Origin: Octopus bimaculoides
Lineage: Eukaryota
NCBI RefSeq assembly: GCF_001194135.2
Contig: NC_068983.1
Span: 27,896,985-27,960,984 of the forward strand
Length of the DNA: 64,000 bases
Reading direction: 5' to 3'
Part shown: positions 33,391-49,710 of the stretch, piece by piece
Layout of the letters: the number at the start of each line of letters is the position of its first letter
Position numbering within the stretch: the stretch's first letter is position 1
Made by a program: the position numbers and the translations under genes
The notes under the pieces: generated by a model
What the model saw: only the letters and a program-made list of their open reading frames with translations
The model's database searches: none
Told to the model about the DNA's origin: nothing

Positions 33391-34080
33391 ATACAGCTTT
33401 ATTTTTGGATGGGGTATTGTGTTTCTTTTCCTTTTACGCAAACTGTCAAATTTATCCCGAACACTCTATAGTTATCAAAATCGTGCAGTAAAAACTATTA
33501 TTCAACCACTGTAATCTCTGCACAAAAATATGAAAATTTGTGTATTGTCTTCATAAATCTTGTCCCACGAATGCATCAAGGAAAATAGAAAGACCGATGT
33601 CCGGTGTACATTTTGAGTGATATCATATGTCTGGTCGCGCTACTTGCACGGATTTCTGTAACTCTCTGTCGCCACCAAATTCCCGTATTCGTATTTGAAT
33701 TGAAAGCTCGAGTCAAAATGAACCTTTCATGAGCTGGAAACACAACTATGGACGCCTTTCCCATGCAGTTATTCTCATTATAGGGCTTGATGATCCTGAC
33801 CGTTGATTTAGGATTCTTCTGCTCAGCATTAATATAAGAAGTACCGTTGGCTCAGTTGGACTCTTCCGCTGCCTCTTCACAATCCACCATGCTGCAGTCC
33901 CATGATTACGCCTTCTCCCTAGCAGGGTGGCTGAACGGCAGCTATACCTTGCCAAAGGGCCGCTCGTAACTGTGCAGAGCACAGTCGTTATTCTGTGAGC
34001 TATTTCCATAACAGCCGCCTGCCCTAGATATATTCTGCTGGGTTGCAAACGTGCGAGTTTTCAGGTGAGTAACTATTTAC

Positions 34081-34180
34081 ATGGGGCATATGGTGTAGTG
34101 GTTAAGAGCGCGGGCTACTAACCCCAAGATTCCGAGTTCGATTTCAAGCAGTGACCTGAACAATAATAATAATAATAATC

Positions 34181-34225
<45 letters not shown>

Positions 34226-34390
34226 TCAACAACATCGAAGAATACCTTAGGAATGAGAACCCAGATTCGAAATTTCCCCAAGACACCTGATGAAGGCTGG
34301 AGGGTATATCAGCCAAAACGTTGTGTTAACAACAAACAAGATGAGGACAAATATCCGTCGAATGTAAATAATCTTAATAATGTAAATAAT
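34081..34390 (+). mobile_element. tRNA-headed, hammerhead-containing SINE-like unit (Penelope pLTR-related)
   Basis: tRNA-like head 34083-34156 (A box TGGTGTAGTGG, B box GTTCGATT), (AAT)n, hammerhead core, (AATGTAAAT)n tail; 12-bp TSD GTAACTATTTAC at 34069-34080 and 34391-34402. Confidence 0.85.
34281..34327 (+). ncRNA. Minimal type-I hammerhead ribozyme motif (this copy has G12>A)
   Basis: GACAC-CTGATGA-A-GGCTG-loop-CAGCC-[A]AAAC-GTT-GTGTT; stem I GACAC/GTGTT, stem II GGCTG/CAGCC, palindromic stem III ACGT. Confidence 0.75.
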
Positions 34391-34821
34391 GTAACTATTT
34401 ACCTGTTCTTCACTCGTTTTTGTGGGTGCTCTAGAATGATGCTAAACACAAGATGAACAGAGGCTATGCGACGCAGGTTCGATTTCCAACAGAGCCGAGT
34501 TTCATAACACTTTATTTTCGTATGCACGATTTTACGGTTGTATTTAACAACCCGAATAAGAACGAGATTCATTCTAACAGACTTTCAATCGATATGACAA
34601 AGAATAAATCTTCCGTTGTGATTACTCCACACATTAAACGTAATAGGATATTTTCATTCCATTTGCAACTCAATAATGACATTACTGTTTATTGTAACTT
34701 CACAGTGTCTTCTCACAGCTAATTAGGATGCTAATTAGAATGTAAATATTCATTACGTTCGGATGTGGGTACGTGGGGGTTTACGTGTGTGTAGGCGGGT
34801 GCGGCATGGAGTTCGTGTGTG

Positions 34822-36437: not shown

Positions 36438-36875
36438 CGAAGGTGGCGAGCTGGCAGAATTGCTAGCGTGTCGGATTTTTATGTTCTGAGTTCAAATTCT
36501 GCTGAAGTTGACATTGCCCTTCATCCTTTTGTGGTCGATAAAGTAGGAACTAGTTGAGCACAGGGTCGAAAGATTCTACTCACTCAAACTCCCCAAATTG
36601 CTGGCGTTGTACCAAAATTTGAAACCAATATAAATGCAATTATTTTTGGCCCCCCGCCACCCAAACTATTACAATTATCTGTACGAAGGTGGCGACCAGG
36701 CAGAATCGCTTGCGTGTCGGATCTTTACGTCCTGGGTTCAAATTCTGCCGAGGTTGACTTTAACTTTCACCCTTTCAGGGTCAATAAAATAACTGTCAGT
36801 TGAACCCTGCGTTCGACGTAATTGATTAACCCCTTCCTTTAAATTTGTTGGCTTTGTAGAAAAATTTGAAACCAT
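36438..36875 (+). mobile_element. Two SINE C copies (short form, sharing the same head deletion)
   Basis: ACGAAGGTGGCGA(G/C)C(T/A)GGCAGAAT...GCGTGTCGGAT(T/C)TTTA at 36438 and 36681. Confidence 0.75.
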
Positions 36876-36993
36876 TGTTCCTTTACGCGGTGAGTTGGTG
36901 AAATCCTTATCTCATTGAATAGAACGCCTTACAGTGTTTTTCCCATACAATATTTACAATTGACGGATATTTGTGCTCATCTTGTTTGGTGTT

Positions 36994-37040
36994 TACCCAA
37001 CGCTTCGGCTGATATACCATCCAGCCTTCATCAGGTGTCC
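36994..37040 (-). ncRNA. Minimal hammerhead motif, second copy (GAAAC>GAAGC)
   Basis: GACAC-CTGATGA-A-GGCTG-GATGGTATAT-CAGCC-GAAGC-GTT on the minus strand. Confidence 0.7.
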
Positions 37041-37223
37041 CAGGGAAATTTCGAACCTAGGTTCTCATCTCTAAGGTATTTTTCGGTGTTGTTGTTATTA
37101 TTATTATCATTCAGGTCACTGCCTGGCTTCGAACTTGGAATCTTGGAGTTAGTAGCCCGCGCTCTTAACCATTACGCCATATGCCCGTGGACAACTGTGG
37201 AGTGAATTTTAAGGCTTATAAAT

Positions 37224-37497
37224 CTAATATTCTCCTATCCTCCTTAATACCGGTTCCCATATACTGCTCATATCTGCACTCGGTCTGCTTAGGAGGTTGT
37301 TGTGTCCTAGCATATATGCTGCTTCTTTTAGTTTTCGTATTTTCCAGTGGTGTTCTGTGTCTATTATTTTAACTTCATCCCACAGGGGGAGGTGGTCTCC
37401 ATTTTTCCATACATGATCAGCTATACCCGATTTATCAATATCTCCCCGTGTCACAGTTTTGTGATGTTCCTCTACCCTTATTTTGAGGGGGTGGCAT
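37224..37497 (-). pseudogene. Penelope GIY-YIG endonuclease C-terminal fragment
   Basis: CHPLKIRVEEHHKTVTRGDIDKSGIADHVWKNGDHLPLWDEVKIIDTEHHWKIRKLKEAAYM matches the PLE pattern L..R..EH...KS.IA.H...H...W...KI.D.E....RK..EA. Confidence 0.85.
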
Positions 37498-37901
37498 GGA
37501 AGATGTCCAAGTGATGTTAGAGCATGTGAATTTATAGCCTAAAAATAGCAGTTAAATCTCCCTAAGTCATACCCTACTATCTTAGAAAACTTGTCACAGA
37601 ATAACGTGATTCTAAATCCACTGCCCTCAAGAAAAAGATGGAATCTTTACGGTTAAAATGCTCTTACTATAAGTCTGATCCGTCAGGACTGAACTGCTGT
37701 TTAACAACAGCAATAAATTTACACAGACGGTCACGATTTTCAGGCCTCAAAAATTGGAGTAGGTTTGTCAGTCGATACGGCTAACCACTGGCACTTGACT
37801 ACAGTTTTACTTAGTGGAATTTGAGCTCAGCATGAAAGAGATGGAAAATGCGTTAACCATGTTGTCTGACGTGCTAATGATCCTTTCTACTATAGGCACA
37901 A

Positions 37902-38028
37902 GGAGGGTATATCAACCGAAACGTTGTGTTAACAATAAACAAAATGAGAAAAAATATCCGTCAATTGTAAATAATGTAAACAATGTAAATAATGTACATA
38001 ATTCCTCATCTCTTAAATATAGAACTGT
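37902..38028 (+). mobile_element. Third, 5'-truncated copy of the Penelope pLTR, inserted in a SINE C
   Basis: GAGGGTATATCAACC-GAAAC-GTT-GTGTT...(AATGTAAAT)n...CTCATCTCTTAAATATAGAACTGT; the GAAAC half is intact. Confidence 0.8.
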
Positions 38029-38521
38029 AGTGTTTGTTCTGATTCTCTGTCCACTGAGTTCAAATCCCGTACAGGTCAATCAGCTTAGCCATTTTGAGGG
38101 CGGGGGACAGTCGATTACATTGATCCTAGTACTAGTACTCAACTGCTACTTAATTTATCGACCCCGAAAGGANNNNNNNNNNNNNNNNNNNNNNNNNNNN
38201 NNNNNNNNNNNNNNNNNNNNNNNNNNNNNNNNNNNNNNNNNNNNNNNNNNNNNNNNNNNNNNNNNNNNNNNNNNNNNNNNNNNNNNNNNNNNNNNNNNNN
38301 NNNNNNNNNNNNNNNNNNNNNNNNNNNNNNNNNNNNNNNNNNNNNNNNNNNNNNNNNNNNNNNNNNNNNNNNNNNNNNNNNNNNNNNNNNNNNNNNNNNN
38401 NNNNNNNNNNNNNNNNNNNNNNNNNNNNNNNNNNNNNNNNNNNNNNNNNNNNNNNNNNNNNNNNNNNNNNNNNNNNNNNNNNNNNNNNNNNNNNNNNNNN
38501 NNNNNNNNNNNNNNNNNNNNN

Positions 38522-40669: not shown

Positions 40670-40966
40670 TTAAAGCTTAGCCAGGCTCATGGGCACGCTT
40701 CCCCGGTTTCTATGGCCTATGTGTTTCCCCCAACCGCAGCTGGACGGGACGCCAGTCCTTTGCAGCGTTACTCAAGAAACAGGAAGAAAGAGTGAGAGAA
40801 AGTTCGGGCGAAAGAATACAACAGGGGTCGCCATCCCCCCCCCCTGCCGGACCCTTGTGGAGCTTTAGGTGTTTTCGTTCAATAAACACACGTCCGGTCT
40901 GGGAATCGAAACCGCGATCCTCCGACCGCGAGTCCGCTTCCCTAACCACTGGGGCATTGCGCCTCA
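40670..40966 (-). mobile_element. SINE head A joined to tail 2
   Basis: 5' about 190 bp matches family A; the 3' part AGTAAC...GACTGG...GTCCA...AGAAACCGGGGAAGCG matches the tail of the family D copy at 49468. Confidence 0.75.
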
Positions 40967-41532: not shown

Positions 41533-41870
41533 AAATGCGTGGCTCATTGGTTTGAGCGTCAAGTTCACAATCATGAGGTTGTGAGTTCGATACCTGGACC
41601 GGGTTGTGTATTGTGTTCTCGAGCAAGACACTTCATTTCAAGTTGTTCCAGTTCACTCAGCTGTAGAAATGAGTTGCGATGTCACTGGTGCCAAGCTGCA
41701 TCGGTTTTTAACTTTCTCCTGAATAACATCGATGATGTGGAGAGGGGAGGCTTGTATTTATGGGCGACTGTTGATCTTCCATAAACAATCTTGCCCGGAC
41801 TCGTGTCACGGAGAACATTTTAAGTGCAATCCCATGGTCATTCATGACCGAAGGGGATCTTTTTACAGTC
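41533..41870 (+). mobile_element. SINE family D head + tail 3
   Basis: GCGTGGCTCATTGG...GAGTTCGATACC head and GAGCAAGACACTT core. Confidence 0.7.
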
Positions 41871-44590: not shown

Positions 44591-47500
44591 AACTTGAATC
44601 AGTATAGAAGCCTCACTGTGGTCACTCGGTTGCAAGAAATGGTGGCTAAATCTCCTTCAAGTATCCCTCTATTGTGTTAAATAAAGGACACCTCATAATA
44701 TAGTCCTGCATATCTCTAAAAGACTAGACGGTTACGGCTGAACCACTATTGATAGTAGTTATGCTCAAATTCGGCTTGAATTAATATCTGAACAAATAAC
44801 GACAAAATGATCAATAATACTTCAATGATAATTTTATAGTGCATTGATGACATAAGTGAGATACAATAATTTCAAACAGAAATACTATCCGACTAAAATT
44901 TGTGTGATATCGACATACATAAAGCAGTAAACACTGAAGAAAATATTTAAAGAAAATAGAATAACATATGCAGAAGAATAAAGAAATATTTGACGATGAC
45001 AAGTATAGATCAACGCCTGACATATTTGTAATCTTTTGAGCTACCTCAACGAATGTATAGCTCGTCGAAATTTGTTTGTCTGGAAACTATCGGTGCACGC
45101 TGTCCGCAGTAATGCTTTCGTTTAGTTGGTGAAGTGCAAGGTCGCTTTTATTTTTCAGAGAAATAAATTAAATGAATCAATACTTCTTAGAATATATGAT
45201 AGAGCAAAGCAGAATCAAACTTACTGTGTTTTGATCTCATAAGATTGGGCCATACATGGCAGTTTCCCTGAGACCATATGGGTCTAACGGCTCAATTTTG
45301 ATTTATGTATGCTGTGGTTTGCCGTCAATATAAGGCCCAGTCCATTGATTTACGTTGTAGCCTATAATATTGTTAAACAGCCTTGCTTGAGGTGGAGGTT
45401 TAATTGATATAGTGTTAAATAAGTCCTGTCACAATGGTAAGTAGAACGAGAGTAAGAAAGTAACCGTGATAATAATAAGCTTTAATTCAATTTGAAACAC
45501 TTTCTTGAATAGGGATAAAATATCAAAGATAAAATATGAAAGATAAAATATCAAAAATAAAATATCAAAAATATTACCTAATCAGCTAAGGTTCTTCCTT
45601 TTTTAATGTTGCTTTATTGATTAAACAATTATTTTATATTTAAACACCTTCGCATCTTTCATTTTGCCGCCTGTAATATACGCATATACGTGTACTGTGT
45701 GTACACACGCATATAAGTATTCTTTTATATATTTGTTTGTGTGTACACATGTATATACATGGTCTTCCGTCTGAGTGTGTGTTATGTATGTATACTTATA
45801 CACACACACGTATTATGTATATACATGTGTGTATGTGTATGCGATCGCACGTGTACCTTTAAAGATTTTATCAGTCATCCTTAGAACGTAATACATTTAA
45901 AATTCTTTAATGGGTGCAAACAAGAAGAGATGAAACATCCTTTACCTTCGAAATCTTGATGAAATCAGTTTCAGAGAAAACCAAGTTTAGTGAAAAATAA
46001 GAAACCTACTCGATTGTCAGAAACATCGAGACTAATTGCAGCCTTGTATTCTCTAAAACAGATCACAATAAATCTTTGAAAATAGAAAAGAAAAAACAAA
46101 CATTTTCTGTAAATGGCGCATTTTAACGCACCTTATATATACCAAGAATATATCATTTGTGCGAATAGTTTGTTAATTTTTTTTTTGTTCTTGTCTTATT
46201 ATGATCGTTGTAGTTTTTGTGTTTCATTTTTCAAGTTTCTTTTATTATTACTTTCATCTATAAAGTAGTTGATGAGGTTTTCAATAGCTTTCGTCTTTAC
46301 TTATATATATATGTGACGTGTTGATCTTAGCACAACTGAAGTGTAATATATTCGTAATCTGGTACAACTTTTCTGCTATGATAGTTATACTCTGTGTGTC
46401 AGGCTAGCTATACTGTCTTTCTGTTGTGCTTTGCTGTGTCTGGAATATAGCAACAACCAAAAATCTTTCCACTTCTTTTAGCTGATAATACAGAAAGCGA
46501 GAATGGTTGAGGGAATGACTCATTTGATAAGATAGAATGTAATCAATATATGTGCAAAGAATGAACACATGTGGTCGGATTTGGTGAGAGACAATCATGG
46601 CCAGAGACACAGAAAACTGACGTTATTCAGTTACTGTGTTACTACAAAAGAAAGTATCCAGTTTTTAATCGACTCATTAAAAGATAAGAAAAAATTAATA
46701 TAAAAGATATATGTATATCAATGTCTTATGAGGGAATTTGGTAGAAGGAAACTGTATGGAAGCCCATCGTGTGTGTGTTTGTGTGAGACCACTGCTGTTG
46801 TTTCTTTTACATCCCTGTAACTTAGCGGTTTGGCAAAAGAGCCAGACTGCATACGTACCAGTCACTTTTTTGACAAAACACACACGTACGTACTTAGGAA
46901 GGTGCATAGGCTAGTGGTTAGGGCTTTACACTCTCGGTGTAAACCGTGGTTTCGATCCCCAGACCGGCGGTATGTTCTGTTCTTCAGCAAAACACTTCGT
47001 TTCACGTTGCTCTAGTCTACTCATCGTTAATAATCTGCTAAGGAAGGTTAGAGATGAAGTATATGATCGGGAGCCATCGTCACTTTCTTTACTATAAAGA
47101 GTGTAACTTGTCCAGGGAAAATTGATGTATAAAATATGTGTATATTCTCAGATATACGAATACTTCCTCTCTAAATTTAGCATATTGAGATTATGTTCTA
47201 GTTGTATACCCTATCTCTCTCTCTCTCTCTCTCGTACATGTATATAAGTGTACTTGTGAGTTTGTGAGAGAGAAATCACCTTAGGTTGAGAATCATTTCA
47301 TTCGACAAGGAATAGCTTGTGATGTTACCGTTCACTCAGTTAACTCTCTTTCGCACAATAATACCTGCATTCTCTTTCTGATAATCAGAAAGAGTCAAGA
47401 GCTCTTTTTTAAGTCATTCATTTACAAATAGATTATCCGCAGTCGATCGTTTCAATTATGACTGTTGATGGCTTTGTCATGACTTGATAAGCTTTTTCCT

Positions 47501-48880: not shown

Positions 48881-49467
48881 CAGGCAAATGAAAGTGAATT
48901 GATTTTTTCATAAGAAAAGTAGACAGGTAGAGAAGTAGATTATCGACAAGCGGGATCGAAACTGATTTGTGAGCATTTGGTTTAGTGGAAGTTTATCAAT
49001 ACTCAATGTCTCTTGCTTCAAAATTCTATTTTGATGTCTAACATAAAATACAAGGCTTTTCGTATTTAAGAAAGTGGATATTATTTATGGTGTTCATCAT
49101 ACTACTGTTAACTCTCATAGCAACACTAGTAGTATAAATCAAGTAGAACCGACAAGAGAAACAAGAAAAGCTGTCTCCCAAAGGGTTATGTGTCTACTCT
49201 ATGCTTATAGTTTCAAGACGTTATATTAACAGCTTTATTTATATTAGACAGCTCAAACCGGTTATTCTGTTCTGAGAATTTCTTATTTATTCATATTTTA
49301 AGGATGTTCAATAGTTGACGAGAATCACAGAAACTGAAGAAAGTTCTTCTACGATATCACTGGACCTGCTAGAAATAGCAGTCAATTTTTCTTCAAATCA
49401 CACTCTATAATCTTGATAAGAGGCAGGACTTTGGACATGTCAGCTGGACTGGAAACTATGGCTAACT

Positions 49468-49710
49468 TGAGCTTAGTGGTTAGGGTGTCGAATTCCTACT
49501 AATAAGATTGTGGTTTCGATTCCTGGACTGGGCGATGCGTTGTGTTCTTGAGCAAAACACTTCCTTTCACGTTGCTCCACTCCACTCAGCTGGTAGAAAT
49601 TAGTAACATTGTGACAGACCGGTTTCTTGTCCAATGGGGAATTTATACACCCAGAAACCGGGAAACCGGCCCTATGGGACTATATGACTCGGGAAGAAAC
49701 TTTATTCTGA
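49468..49710 (+). mobile_element. SINE family D head + tail 2
   Basis: GCTTAGTGGTTAGGG...GGTTTCGATTCC head; tail homologous to 40670-40790 (-). Confidence 0.75.

What the first reader, a model, noticed from the sequence alone, without database searches (positions are those of the whole stretch)
34069..34402. Stand-alone tRNA + hammerhead unit with a 12-bp TSD: candidate Penelope-mobilised SINE
Seen: the unit 34081-34390 starts at the tRNA-like 5' end, lacks any GIY-YIG sequence, ends in an (AATGTAAAT)n tail and is bracketed by an exact GTAACTATTTAC duplication. Its sense strand has no run of four or more T, so Pol III could read through it. Established: SINE tails normally derive from LINE partners, and known hammerhead non-autonomous elements (retrozymes, Schistosoma SM-alpha) are separate classes. 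Inference: this is a Pol III SINE born from the PLE 3' end and moved by the PLE RT/GIY-YIG machinery.
Basis: partly seen in the sequence, partly recalled or inferred. Interest (0 to 1): 0.85.

Follow-up and report, generated by a model that had tools for sequence, protein, structure and literature searches.

The report
Penelope 3' end copy, SINE-like
A 310-base retrotransposed copy of the end of an octopus Penelope-like retrotransposon starts where a tRNA-type promoter begins, so it may be the first SINE known to ride on a Penelope element, but too few copies could be examined to prove it.

Summary
An exact, window-unique 12-bp duplication (34069-80 / 34391-402) brackets a 310-bp unit made of: a tRNA-type A/B-box head, an (AAT)n run, a minimal type-I hammerhead, and a 9-mer repeat tail.

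The whole unit is collinear with the 3' UTR of a Penelope-like element (PLE). The same head, hammerhead and tail follow the GIY-YIG stop codon at 37239-36951(-) and in seven further PLE ends from three sublineages. So the tRNA-like module is an old, built-in part of this PLE clade. It is not a separate head fused to a PLE tail. Mobilisation by PLE machinery is well supported.

Whether the unit is a true Pol III SINE or a 5'-truncated PLE copy is unresolved. For a SINE: the unit starts at A(-2), 9-10 nt before box A, and a rearranged Octopus vulgaris locus reads as ending at the same base. Against: only two such ends in about 84 kb, no expression data, and no genome-wide census was possible.

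This copy's hammerhead has G12 changed to A by CpG decay. ARAGORN and Rfam recognise neither the tRNA nor the ribozyme. Schistosoma Sm-alpha is a precedent for a tRNA head plus hammerhead. New variant of a known kind.

The parts
34069..34080 (+). Left copy of the target-site duplication, GTAACTATTTAC
   Evidence: Exact match to 34391-34402. The 12-mer occurs only at these two places in the window.
34081..34083 (+). 5' leader ATG. Read as A(-2), then C(-1) changed to T by CpG decay, plus one extra G, compared with the PLE context ..CAC|GGGCAT
   Evidence: Alignment of the unit with four PLE 3' UTR contexts. Homology to the PLE stops here and the duplication abuts it directly.
34084..34160 (+). 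tRNA-derived head: box A at 34091-34101 (TGGTGTAGTGG) and box-B-like at 34135-34145 (AGTTCGATTTC)
   Evidence: Homologous heads lie in PLE 3' UTRs. Box A plus box B pairs number 14 in the window against 0.9 in shuffles. Not recognised by ARAGORN or Rfam.
34161..34224 (+). Internal (AAT)n microsatellite of variable length among copies
   Evidence: Same position in the copies at 37110-37095(-) and in L001, with different lengths.
34225..34281 (+). Body, with a second box-B-like motif (AGATTCGAAATTTCC, 34263-34277)
   Evidence: Conserved in all Octopus-type copies.
34282..34327 (+). Minimal type-I hammerhead. Helix I: 34282-86 with 34323-27. CUGAUGA: 34287-93. Bulged A: 34294. Helix II: 34295-300 with 34309-14. 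G12 to A: 34315. Palindromic ACGU: 34318-21. Predicted cleavage after U 34322.
   Evidence: Motif fit to Cervera & de la Pena 2014 (PMC4209133).. Other copies carry GAAAC.
34328..34360 (+). 3' region between the ribozyme and the tail (AACAAACAAGATGAGGACAAATATCCGTCG)
   Evidence: Conserved across Octopus-type and ERZ-type PLE 3' ends.
34361..34390 (+). Tail of 9-mer repeats, (AATGTAAAT)n, about 3.3 units
   Evidence: Repeat number varies from 1 to 4 among copies. The next unit would begin GTA, which overlaps the duplication.
34391..34402 (+). Right copy of the target-site duplication
36951..37189 (-). Second copy of the same module (head, short AAT run, body, hammerhead, tail), forming the 3' UTR of a PLE fragment
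   Evidence: blastn and nhmmer; alignment; 87% identity to the unit outside the microsatellite.
37239..37496 (-). C-terminal 86 residues of a PLE GIY-YIG endonuclease ORF. The stop codon lies about 35 nt upstream of the tRNA-like head.
   Evidence: Translation; tblastn at 87% identity to the L010 PLE protein; relatives carry RVT_1 plus GIY-YIG.
37902..38022 (+). 5'-truncated copy in the opposite orientation (starts inside helix II), with four tail repeats and a ~30-nt extension ACATAATTCCTCATCTCTTAAATATAGAAC
   Evidence: The same extension occurs in two L001 copies with different flanks.

Best explanation
The unit is a retrotransposed copy of the last ~310 nt of a cephalopod Penelope-like element (PLE).

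In this PLE clade the 3' UTR, starting 35-50 nt after the GIY-YIG stop codon, carries in order:
- a tRNA-derived module with Pol III A and B boxes;
- an (AAT)n run;
- a minimal dimer-type hammerhead;
- a tail of AATGTAAAT repeats.

My reading is that Pol III starts at the A two bases before the tRNA-like sequence. It transcribes a short subgenomic RNA through the uncleaved (monomeric, hence inactive) hammerhead and tail into the flank. The PLE reverse transcriptase/GIY-YIG endonuclease then copies this RNA in trans by target-primed reverse transcription, starting on the tail repeats. That yields a 9-12 bp target-site duplication.

The PLE would thus carry a built-in SINE, and 34081-34390 is one old, now decayed copy.

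Shown: the anatomy, collinearity with the PLE 3' end, the duplication, the variable tail, and the position of the 5' end.
Inferred: Pol III transcription, trans-mobilisation, and that a family of such copies exists.
For: - Exact 12-bp duplication abutting both homology ends.
- Full-length collinearity with PLE 3' UTRs in the window (36951-37496, minus strand), O. vulgaris L001, and L010.
- PLE identity of the upstream ORF: profile hits carry RVT_1 plus C-terminal GIY-YIG.
- The tRNA-like module is retained at the same place in three PLE sublineages that are 60-87% identical in protein (L004, L005, L009, L011, L013, L010, L001, window). The best-conserved blocks of the head lie over boxes A and B.
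- The unit starts at A(-2) after a pyrimidine, 9-10 nt before box A, with no filler bases needed.
- The L001 12053-12076 junction reads rc(head)+AC+GGGCATATGG, which I read as the same A(-2) end in an insertion not selected for its 5' end.
- Tail repeat number varies from 1 to 4, as expected from priming or slippage on the tail.
- No T4 occurs before the tail in four Octopus copies (weak).
- Precedent: Sm-alpha, a tRNA-derived Pol III SINE-like element with a hammerhead (PMC2770079, PMC6765202).
Against: - Only two SINE-length ends were seen, and the L001 one is rearranged (internal deletions, palindrome) and open to another reading.
- The other truncated copies end elsewhere (37902 inside helix II; L001 10052 after the ribozyme).
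- Nothing in the unit is SINE-specific. It is collinear with the PLE throughout, and SINE-length copies share no diagnostic substitutions against PLE-linked copies.
- This copy's box B has 2 mismatches.
- The head is not recognised as tRNA by ARAGORN or Rfam.
- Absence of T4 is expected by chance in 39% of shuffles.
- The finding was selected because its 5' end coincides with the head.
- There are no transcript data.
Confidence: 0.5

Rival explanations
1. An ordinary dead-on-arrival PLE insertion. Reverse transcription of a full-length Pol II PLE RNA stopped about 310 nt from the 3' end. The coincidence with the tRNA-like start is chance, or is favoured by the small hairpin (UGYCC-loop-GGRCA) that spans that position. 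The A/B boxes would then be relics, or would serve the PLE in another way.
For: - 5' truncation is the rule for PLEs, and most solo hammerheads are ascribed to truncated PLEs (PMC4209133).
- The unit is collinear with the PLE 3' end and has no private sequence.
- Truncations at other points occur in the same 84 kb.
- A conserved inverted repeat flanks the head start and could be a template-switch hot spot. L009 carries a 19-nt inverted duplication there inside a PLE context.
Against: - With three 3'-end copies in the window, I estimate the chance that one ends within 3 nt of the head start at a few percent.
- A second locus gives the same base.
- A hairpin stall should stop the enzyme 3' of the stem (about +6), not in the loop at -2.
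- Retention of near-consensus A and B boxes in three sublineages is unexplained.
Confidence: 0.38
2. A conventional tRNA-derived SINE mobilised by a LINE. One copy inserted long ago into a PLE 3' UTR, so the resemblance runs from SINE to PLE and the PLE is not the mobiliser.
For: - Octopus genomes hold very many tRNA-derived SINEs. 893 of the 900 recently active SINE families in O. vulgaris are unclassified (PMC13282606).
- There are 14 box A plus box B pairs in this window.
- One PLE copy (L002) lacks the module.
Against: - The shared part runs to the very 3' terminus, including the hammerhead and tail. These are PLE hallmarks and are also present in the PLE copy without the head (L002).
- The 3' UTR up to the head is homologous across PLE sublineages.
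- No LINE with this tail was seen in the window.
Confidence: 0.05
3. A monomer derived from a non-LTR retrozyme: a hammerhead-processed, circular-RNA-borne repeat.
For: - Animal retrozymes are proposed to be non-autonomous PLE derivatives (bioRxiv 10.64898/2026.07.22.740005).
- An ERZ-type locus (L011) has about 96-nt units in tandem, starting within 2 nt of the predicted cleavage site.
Against: - The unit is single, not tandem.
- Its ends are not at the hammerhead cleavage site.
- It keeps the ribozyme uncut in the middle, and it ends in a tail with a duplication.
Confidence: 0.03

Closest known systems
Sm-alpha / Sj-alpha SINE-like elements of Schistosoma
   Same: A short non-autonomous retroposon with a tRNA-derived head (tRNA-Gln-like), apparent Pol III transcription and a type-I hammerhead (PMC2770079, PMC6765202).
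   Different: - Sm-alpha carries a canonical hammerhead and often sits in tandem.
- No autonomous partner with the same head and tail was reported in the papers I could read.
- Here the ribozyme is the minimal dimer type, and the whole unit is found as the 3' UTR of an RT/GIY-YIG element.
- Sequence homology to Sm-alpha was not tested.
5'-truncated PLE copies / solo pLTR fragments with minimal hammerheads (Cervera & de la Pena 2014)
   Same: - A minimal hammerhead with a 6-bp helix II, a 5-bp helix I, a bulged base after position 9 and palindromic 15.2-16.2.
- Thousands of solo motifs per genome are ascribed to truncated PLEs.
- Inverted adjacent fragments and a ~30-nt extension, as described for PLEs (PMC4209133, PMC8557442).
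   Different: No tRNA-type promoter module has been described in PLE terminal regions in the papers I could search. Here the truncation point coincides with that module.
Classical tRNA-derived SINEs with a LINE-derived tail (SINE2)
   Same: Boxes A and B at 44-nt spacing, length about 300 bp, no ORF, a target-site duplication, and a 3' end shared with an autonomous reverse-transcriptase element.
   Different: - The partner would be a PLE, not a LINE.
- The head is also present in the partner, so the unit is not a composite of independent parts.
Animal non-LTR retrozymes
   Same: Non-autonomous, hammerhead-bearing, and proposed to be PLE derivatives (bioRxiv 10.64898/2026.07.22.740005; PMC7229834).
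   Different: Retrozymes are tandem and are thought to propagate through circular RNA cut at the ribozymes. This unit is single, is bounded by a duplication and a tail, and has a Pol III-type head.
Cassandra / Helenus / Ajax (LTR elements with 5S- or tRNA-derived Pol III promoters in their LTRs)
   Same: A small-RNA-gene promoter embedded in the terminal repeat of a retroelement (PMC10886601).
   Different: Those are non-autonomous LTR elements. Their autonomous partners are thought not to share the promoter-bearing region. Here the autonomous PLE itself carries it.

Membership tests
tRNA-derived SINE (SINE2) | Internal Pol III promoter: box A and box B at tRNA-like spacing | tested here: met
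   Unit: TGGTGTAGTGG and AGTTCGATTTC (2 mismatches), 44 nt apart. Family: TGGCGTAGTGG and AGTTCGAAGCC. Such pairs number 14 in the window against 0.9 in shuffles.
tRNA-derived SINE (SINE2) | Head recognisable as derived from a tRNA | tested here: not met
   ARAGORN found 0 genes. The Rfam tRNA model gave no match at E<=10, even on 90 bases. There is no acceptor stem. A resemblance to tRNA-Arg(ACG) is recalled from memory only and was not tested.
tRNA-derived SINE (SINE2) | Short, non-coding, flanked by a target-site duplication, with a 3' end shared with an autonomous element | tested here: met
   310 bp, 12-bp duplication, and a 3' end identical in layout to PLE 3' ends.
tRNA-derived SINE (SINE2) | Many copies with a uniform 5' end at the head start | tested here: inconclusive
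   Two ends at A(-2) (window 34081; L001 12053-12076), against PLE-linked and otherwise truncated copies, in about 84 kb. No genome-wide sample could be obtained.
tRNA-derived SINE (SINE2) | Composite origin: the head is not part of the autonomous partner | tested here: not met
   The head lies in the 3' UTR of eight PLE ends (window, L001, L010, L013, L004, L005, L009, L011).
tRNA-derived SINE (SINE2) | Transcription by RNA polymerase III | not testable with these tools
   No transcript or occupancy data. Absence of T4 is uninformative.
Penelope-like element (3'-terminal derivative) | Autonomous relatives encode a reverse transcriptase with a C-terminal GIY-YIG endonuclease | tested here: met
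   The window ORF fragment at 37239-37496(-) matches proteins that carry RVT_1 (P0153, P0259, P0276) and, in P0259 only, GIY-YIG (E 7.8e-4, below Pfam's cutoff), N-terminal to or over the matched part. Pfam does not score the short fragments themselves.
Penelope-like element (3'-terminal derivative) | Hammerhead motif in the terminal repeat region | tested here: met
   Present in 13 aligned copies.
Penelope-like element (3'-terminal derivative) | Insertion architecture: inverted 5'-truncated fragment next to the copy, and a 30-40 bp terminal extension | tested here: met
   The inverted fragment is directly adjacent in L001 9997-10052, L003, L004, L005 and L011. In the window it lies ~400 bp away (37902-38022), with unidentified sequence in between. 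The extension occurs in three Octopus copies with unrelated flanks. Neither feature is present at the unit itself.
Minimal type-I hammerhead of PLEs | Core boxes CUGANGA and GAAA | tested here: not met
   This copy has AAAA (G12 to A at 34315). The Octopus consensus has GAAA (3 of 5 copies), and the change is a CpG transition.
Minimal type-I hammerhead of PLEs | Extra base between positions 9 and 10.1, G10.1-C11.1 pair, long helix II, short helix I, palindromic 15.2-16.2 | tested here: met
   A at 34294; G34295-C34314; helix II 6 bp; helix I 5 bp; ACGU at 34318-21 (criteria from PMC4209133).
Minimal type-I hammerhead of PLEs | Helices supported by compensatory changes | tested here: inconclusive
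   75.5% of cells are paired in register against 18-45% when slid. Three pairs have changes on both sides, but the covariation score is reached by 149 of 500 shuffles.
Minimal type-I hammerhead of PLEs | Match to curated hammerhead covariance models; self-cleavage | tested here: not met
   No Rfam hammerhead match at gathering score or at E<=10. Cleavage cannot be tested here.
Non-LTR retrozyme | Tandem units, each bounded by hammerhead cleavage sites | tested here: not met
   A single unit with the ribozyme internal. A tandem array of post-cleavage units was seen only in the ERZ-type locus L011.

The most novel reading that the evidence does not exclude
A clade of cephalopod Penelope-like elements carries, as a conserved part of its 3' UTR/pseudo-LTR, a tRNA-type Pol III promoter (with a small hairpin at its start) placed just upstream of the hammerhead. 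Every PLE copy would then be a potential launcher of subgenomic SINE RNAs, which the PLE enzyme copies in trans. That would be the first SINE-PLE partnership. It might also be a source of some of the many unclassified octopus SINEs, and a model for how Sm-alpha-type elements arose.
Probability: 0.45. Interest if true: 0.75.

Novelty: new variant of a known kind. Interest (0 to 1): 0.58.

Why it matters
SINEs are defined by their dependence on LINEs. In the literature I could search, no SINE has been tied to a Penelope-like element.

PLE biology is also poorly understood. Open questions include how their RNAs are made, what the hammerhead does, and why copies sit in tandem or inverted arrays.

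A PLE with its own Pol III module would do three things:
- give a concrete, testable link between PLEs, hammerhead-bearing SINE-like elements such as Sm-alpha, and animal retrozymes;
- offer a simple system (head plus ribozyme plus tail, about 300 nt) for asking what a PLE reverse transcriptase recognises;
- possibly account for part of the large, mostly unclassified SINE load of octopus genomes.

If the census fails, the finding is an ordinary truncated PLE copy. The conserved A/B-box module in the PLE 3' UTR would still need an explanation.

Tried and rejected
- **Recognition by curated models.** ARAGORN and Rfam (gathering score, and E<=10) on the window, the unit, L004 and L013 found no tRNA and no hammerhead.
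- **More Octopus copies through proteins.**
  - A query made from the open frame across body, ribozyme and tail found only P0010 and P0011. P0011's gene range was too long to return DNA, and P0010 is not on record.
  - A query from the neighbouring decarboxylase gene of L001, meant to fetch orthologous loci, returned no Octopus genome entries. That was a wasted search.
- **Exact-pattern scans.** The head pattern gave three chance bacterial matches in JGI metagenomes and none in viral contigs.
- **Literature.** Sequence strings searched in the paper library gave no hits. The supplement of the O. vulgaris repeat paper holds no consensus library. Ferbeyre 1998 and Lunse 2017 are not held.
- **Pfam on the short GIY-YIG fragments.** No hit. 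This was solved through a profile search and Pfam on longer relatives.
- **T-run argument.** Rejected as uninformative.
- **Diagnostic substitutions.** None separate SINE-length copies from PLE-linked copies.
- **OR1/OR2 CORE-SINEs.** Considered and rejected, because the unit lacks a CORE domain. The CORE-like SINE in the window is a different family (near 36700).
- **RNase P-type processing at the head.** Rejected, because no acceptor stem exists.
Full report
**1. Observation**

The sequence is as described. GTAACTATTTAC occurs at 34069-34080 and 34391-34402 and nowhere else in the window on either strand. Exact 12-mers repeated 150-600 bp apart are not rare in this window: one search lists 54 pairs, nearly all from neighbouring SINEs and microsatellites. 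From base composition I expect about one by chance. This pair, however, abuts both ends of a stretch that belongs to a repeat family, and I estimate the chance of that at about 5e-6. Its first three bases (GTA) continue the tail repeat, so the duplication proper is 9-12 bp.

The unit at 34081-34390 contains, in order:
- 34081-83: a 3-nt leader;
- 34084-34160: a tRNA-type head, with box A TGGTGTAGTGG at 34091-101 and box-B-like AGTTCGATTTC at 34135-145;
- 34161-34224: an (AAT)n run;
- 34225-34281: a body;
- 34282-34327: a hammerhead;
- 34328-34360: a 3' region;
- 34361-34390: about three AATGTAAAT repeats.

No run of four or more T occurs in it, but 39% of shuffles of the unit show the same. 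That argument carries little weight.

**2. What curated tools see**

ARAGORN finds no tRNA. Rfam finds no tRNA and no hammerhead, at gathering scores or at E<=10, even when only 90 bases are searched. The head therefore resembles a tRNA gene in its promoter boxes and primary sequence only. It has no acceptor stem. Box A plus box B pairs at 30-60 nt spacing number 14 in the window against 0.9 in shuffles. The window is thus full of tRNA-derived SINE heads, and the sister copy at 37179/37135 is one of the 14.

**3. The hammerhead**

The motif is CUGAUGA, a bulged A, GGCUGG...CAGCC, (G)AAA, CG, UU|GUGUU. It meets every feature that Cervera and de la Pena list for the minimal PLE hammerhead (PMC4209133):
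- a 6-bp helix II;
- a 5-bp helix I;
- an extra base between positions 9 and 10.1;
- the G10.1-C11.1 pair;
- a palindromic 15.2-16.2, so helix III can form only between two molecules.

The minimum-energy fold of the consensus reproduces helices I and II. In 13 aligned copies 75.5% of cells pair in the proposed register, against 18-45% when slid. Compensatory changes are too few to beat shuffles.

In this copy G12 is A (34315). The consensus ..CCGAAACGTT.. holds two CpGs, and old copies show CA or TG at both. The ribozyme of this copy was thus most likely inactivated by ordinary CpG decay.

**4. The family and its autonomous relative**

The window holds two further copies.

The first, on the minus strand at 37189-36951, has the same head, a short AAT run, the body, the hammerhead and the tail. 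It begins about 35 nt after the stop codon of an ORF fragment at 37496-37239. That fragment reads ..RVEEHHKTVTRGDIDKSGIADHVWKNGDHLPLWDEVKIID...

A profile of this protein and its eight relatives finds 2751 proteins. The longer hits carry RVT_1 N-terminal to the matched part, and one carries GIY-YIG over it. This is the architecture of endonuclease-bearing PLEs. tblastn shows it is the only PLE coding fragment in the window.

The second copy, 37902-38022 on the plus strand, is 5'-truncated inside helix II. It points away from the PLE fragment, about 400 bp upstream of it.

**5. The module belongs to the PLE**

I fetched DNA around relatives of the ORF. These loci carry the same layout (stop codon, about 35-50 nt, tRNA-like head, then body, hammerhead and tail):
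- Octopus vulgaris chromosome OX597819.1 (L001);
- a short octopus-like contig (L010), where the head is followed directly by the tail;
- a Logan contig (L013), 68% protein identity.

A more distant sublineage from assembly ERZ21867824 (L004, L005, L009, L011; 54-68% protein identity) has a homologous module at the same place. L002 lacks it and L003 has an internal deletion. A TARA contig (L012) shows no module within the 68 nt available.

The 3' UTRs align from the stop codon to the tail across these sublineages. Within the head, the conserved blocks lie over boxes A and B, separated by a 20-nt indel. The head is therefore an old, retained part of this PLE clade, not a SINE-specific addition.

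PLE-type insertion features accompany the PLE-linked copies:
- In L001, L003, L004, L005 and L011 an inverted 5'-truncated fragment lies directly upstream; in the window the inverted fragment is about 400 bp away.
- Three Octopus copies with unrelated flanks carry a ~30-nt extension, ACATAATTCCTCATCTCTTAAATATAGAAC. Craig et al. describe this for PLEs (PMC8557442).

**6. The 5' end**

In four PLE contexts the head is preceded by ..YCAC|GGGCAT. The unit reads duplication|AT-GGGGCAT. This is A(-2), C(-1) turned to T at a CpG, and one extra G, so no filler bases are needed. A(-2) follows a pyrimidine and lies 9-10 nt before box A. From general knowledge of type-2 promoters, that is where Pol III would start.

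In L001, a locus fetched for another reason, a copy on the minus strand meets an inverted head at 12053-12076. In minus sense it reads rc(GGGCATAGCGG)+AC+GGGCATATGG, which is again an end at A(-2). That locus is rearranged, with deletions in both arms and long microsatellites. The PLE context is itself a partial palindrome (TGCCC-AC-GGGCA), so I count this only as moderate support.

Other truncated copies end elsewhere. SINE-length and PLE-linked copies share no diagnostic differences. Identities are 84-95%.

**7. Mechanism and rivals**

Mobilisation by the PLE enzyme through target-primed reverse transcription on the tail repeats is well supported. The evidence is the duplication, the variable repeat number, and identity of the 3' end with that of the PLE.

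The open point is the template. I favour a short Pol III transcript that starts at A(-2) and runs through the monomeric, hence inactive, ribozyme (confidence 0.5).

The main rival is plain 5' truncation of a full-length PLE RNA (0.38). The small hairpin at the head start might favour it. However, a stall should fall 3' of the stem rather than in its loop.

A LINE-mobilised SINE captured by the PLE (0.05) and a retrozyme monomer (0.03) fit poorly.

**8. Comparison with what is known**

The pairing of a tRNA head with a hammerhead has a precedent. Sm-alpha of Schistosoma is tRNA-Gln-like and apparently Pol III-transcribed (PMC2770079, PMC6765202). Animal retrozymes have just been proposed to be non-autonomous PLE derivatives (bioRxiv 10.64898/2026.07.22.740005). 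Pol III promoters inside LTRs are known from Cassandra, Helenus and Ajax (PMC10886601).

I found no paper describing either a tRNA-type module in a PLE terminal region or a SINE with a PLE partner. The library lacks most subscription journals and Repbase or Dfam, so this absence is not proof.

I rate the finding a new variant of a known kind.

**9. Limits**

Only about 84 kb of Octopus DNA (the window, L001, L010) and about 120 kb of the ERZ assembly could be examined.

Noticed in passing
window 37239-37496 (-) and 36951-37189 (-): A 5'-truncated PLE: the last 86 codons of the GIY-YIG ORF followed by the same tRNA-like head, hammerhead and tail. It is the only PLE coding fragment in the window.
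   Followed up: yes
window 37993-38022; L001 ~9990-10020 and ~11805-11835: A conserved ~30-nt extension (ACATAATTCCTCATCTCTTAAATATAGAAC) follows the tail in three copies with unrelated flanks. It matches the terminal 'tail extension' described for PLEs and is absent from the unit at 34081.
   Followed up: partly
L011 9484-9969 (-): Downstream of an ERZ-type hammerhead, a ~96-nt unit is repeated about four times head to tail. Each unit runs from within 2 nt of the predicted cleavage site to the element's 3' end. This looks like reverse transcription of ribozyme-cleaved RNAs with template jumps, a retrozyme-like mini-array.
   Followed up: no
window 37186-37200 (-); L001 10400-10416; L010 510-525; L004, L005 just upstream of the head: A small inverted repeat spans the head start: UGCCC-AC-GGGCA in Octopus-type copies and UGUCC-NNNN-GGACA in ERZ-type copies. 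The C-G to U-A change is compensatory, with a U.G intermediate in the window copy. This may be a conserved hairpin of unknown role.
   Followed up: partly
L009 10308-10350: A 19-nt inverted duplication of the start of the tRNA-like head (TTAACCATTATGCTATGAC-TTG-GTCATAGCATAATGGTTA) sits inside a PLE 3' UTR. The head start therefore seems prone to snap-back or template switching.
   Followed up: no
P0011 (O. bimaculoides dystrobrevin beta isoform X1), residues 1-33: The N-terminus MPMGIWHSGEGWRVYQPKCCVNNKQDEDKYPSK translates the head start and the ribozyme-to-tail region of this element. A copy has thus been annotated as an alternative first exon of a host gene. The DNA could not be fetched (gene range over 100 kb).
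   Followed up: partly
window 34263-34277 and the same place in other copies: A second box-B-like motif (GGTTCGAAATTTCC in the consensus) lies in the body, just upstream of the hammerhead.
   Followed up: no
window 5438-5490, 15580-15632, 40912-40956, 41540-41594, 46907-46959, 49459-49523 and others: Further box A plus box B pairs mark heads of other tRNA-derived SINE families. CORE-SINE-like sequence (..GGTTCAAATTCTGCCGAGGTTGACTTTAACTTTCACCCTTTCAGGGTCAATAAAATAA) lies near 36700-36800.
   Followed up: no
window 37497-37901: About 400 bp between the truncated PLE ORF and the inverted tail fragment match neither the PLE protein nor the unit. In L001 the two parts are directly adjacent. The origin of this stretch is unknown.
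   Followed up: no
L002 10530-10540 versus L004 10660-10790: One ERZ-type PLE copy lacks the ~125-nt tRNA-like module exactly, with AAC/AAT microhomology at the junction. It is either a deletion or a trace of the state before the module was acquired.
   Followed up: no
window, many places (e.g. 240-1130, 11540-11990, 20770-21130, 38175-38520): 4348 N in assembly gaps, usually next to dinucleotide microsatellites. The window comes from a gapped short-read scaffold, so some repeat copies may be missing or collapsed.
   Followed up: no
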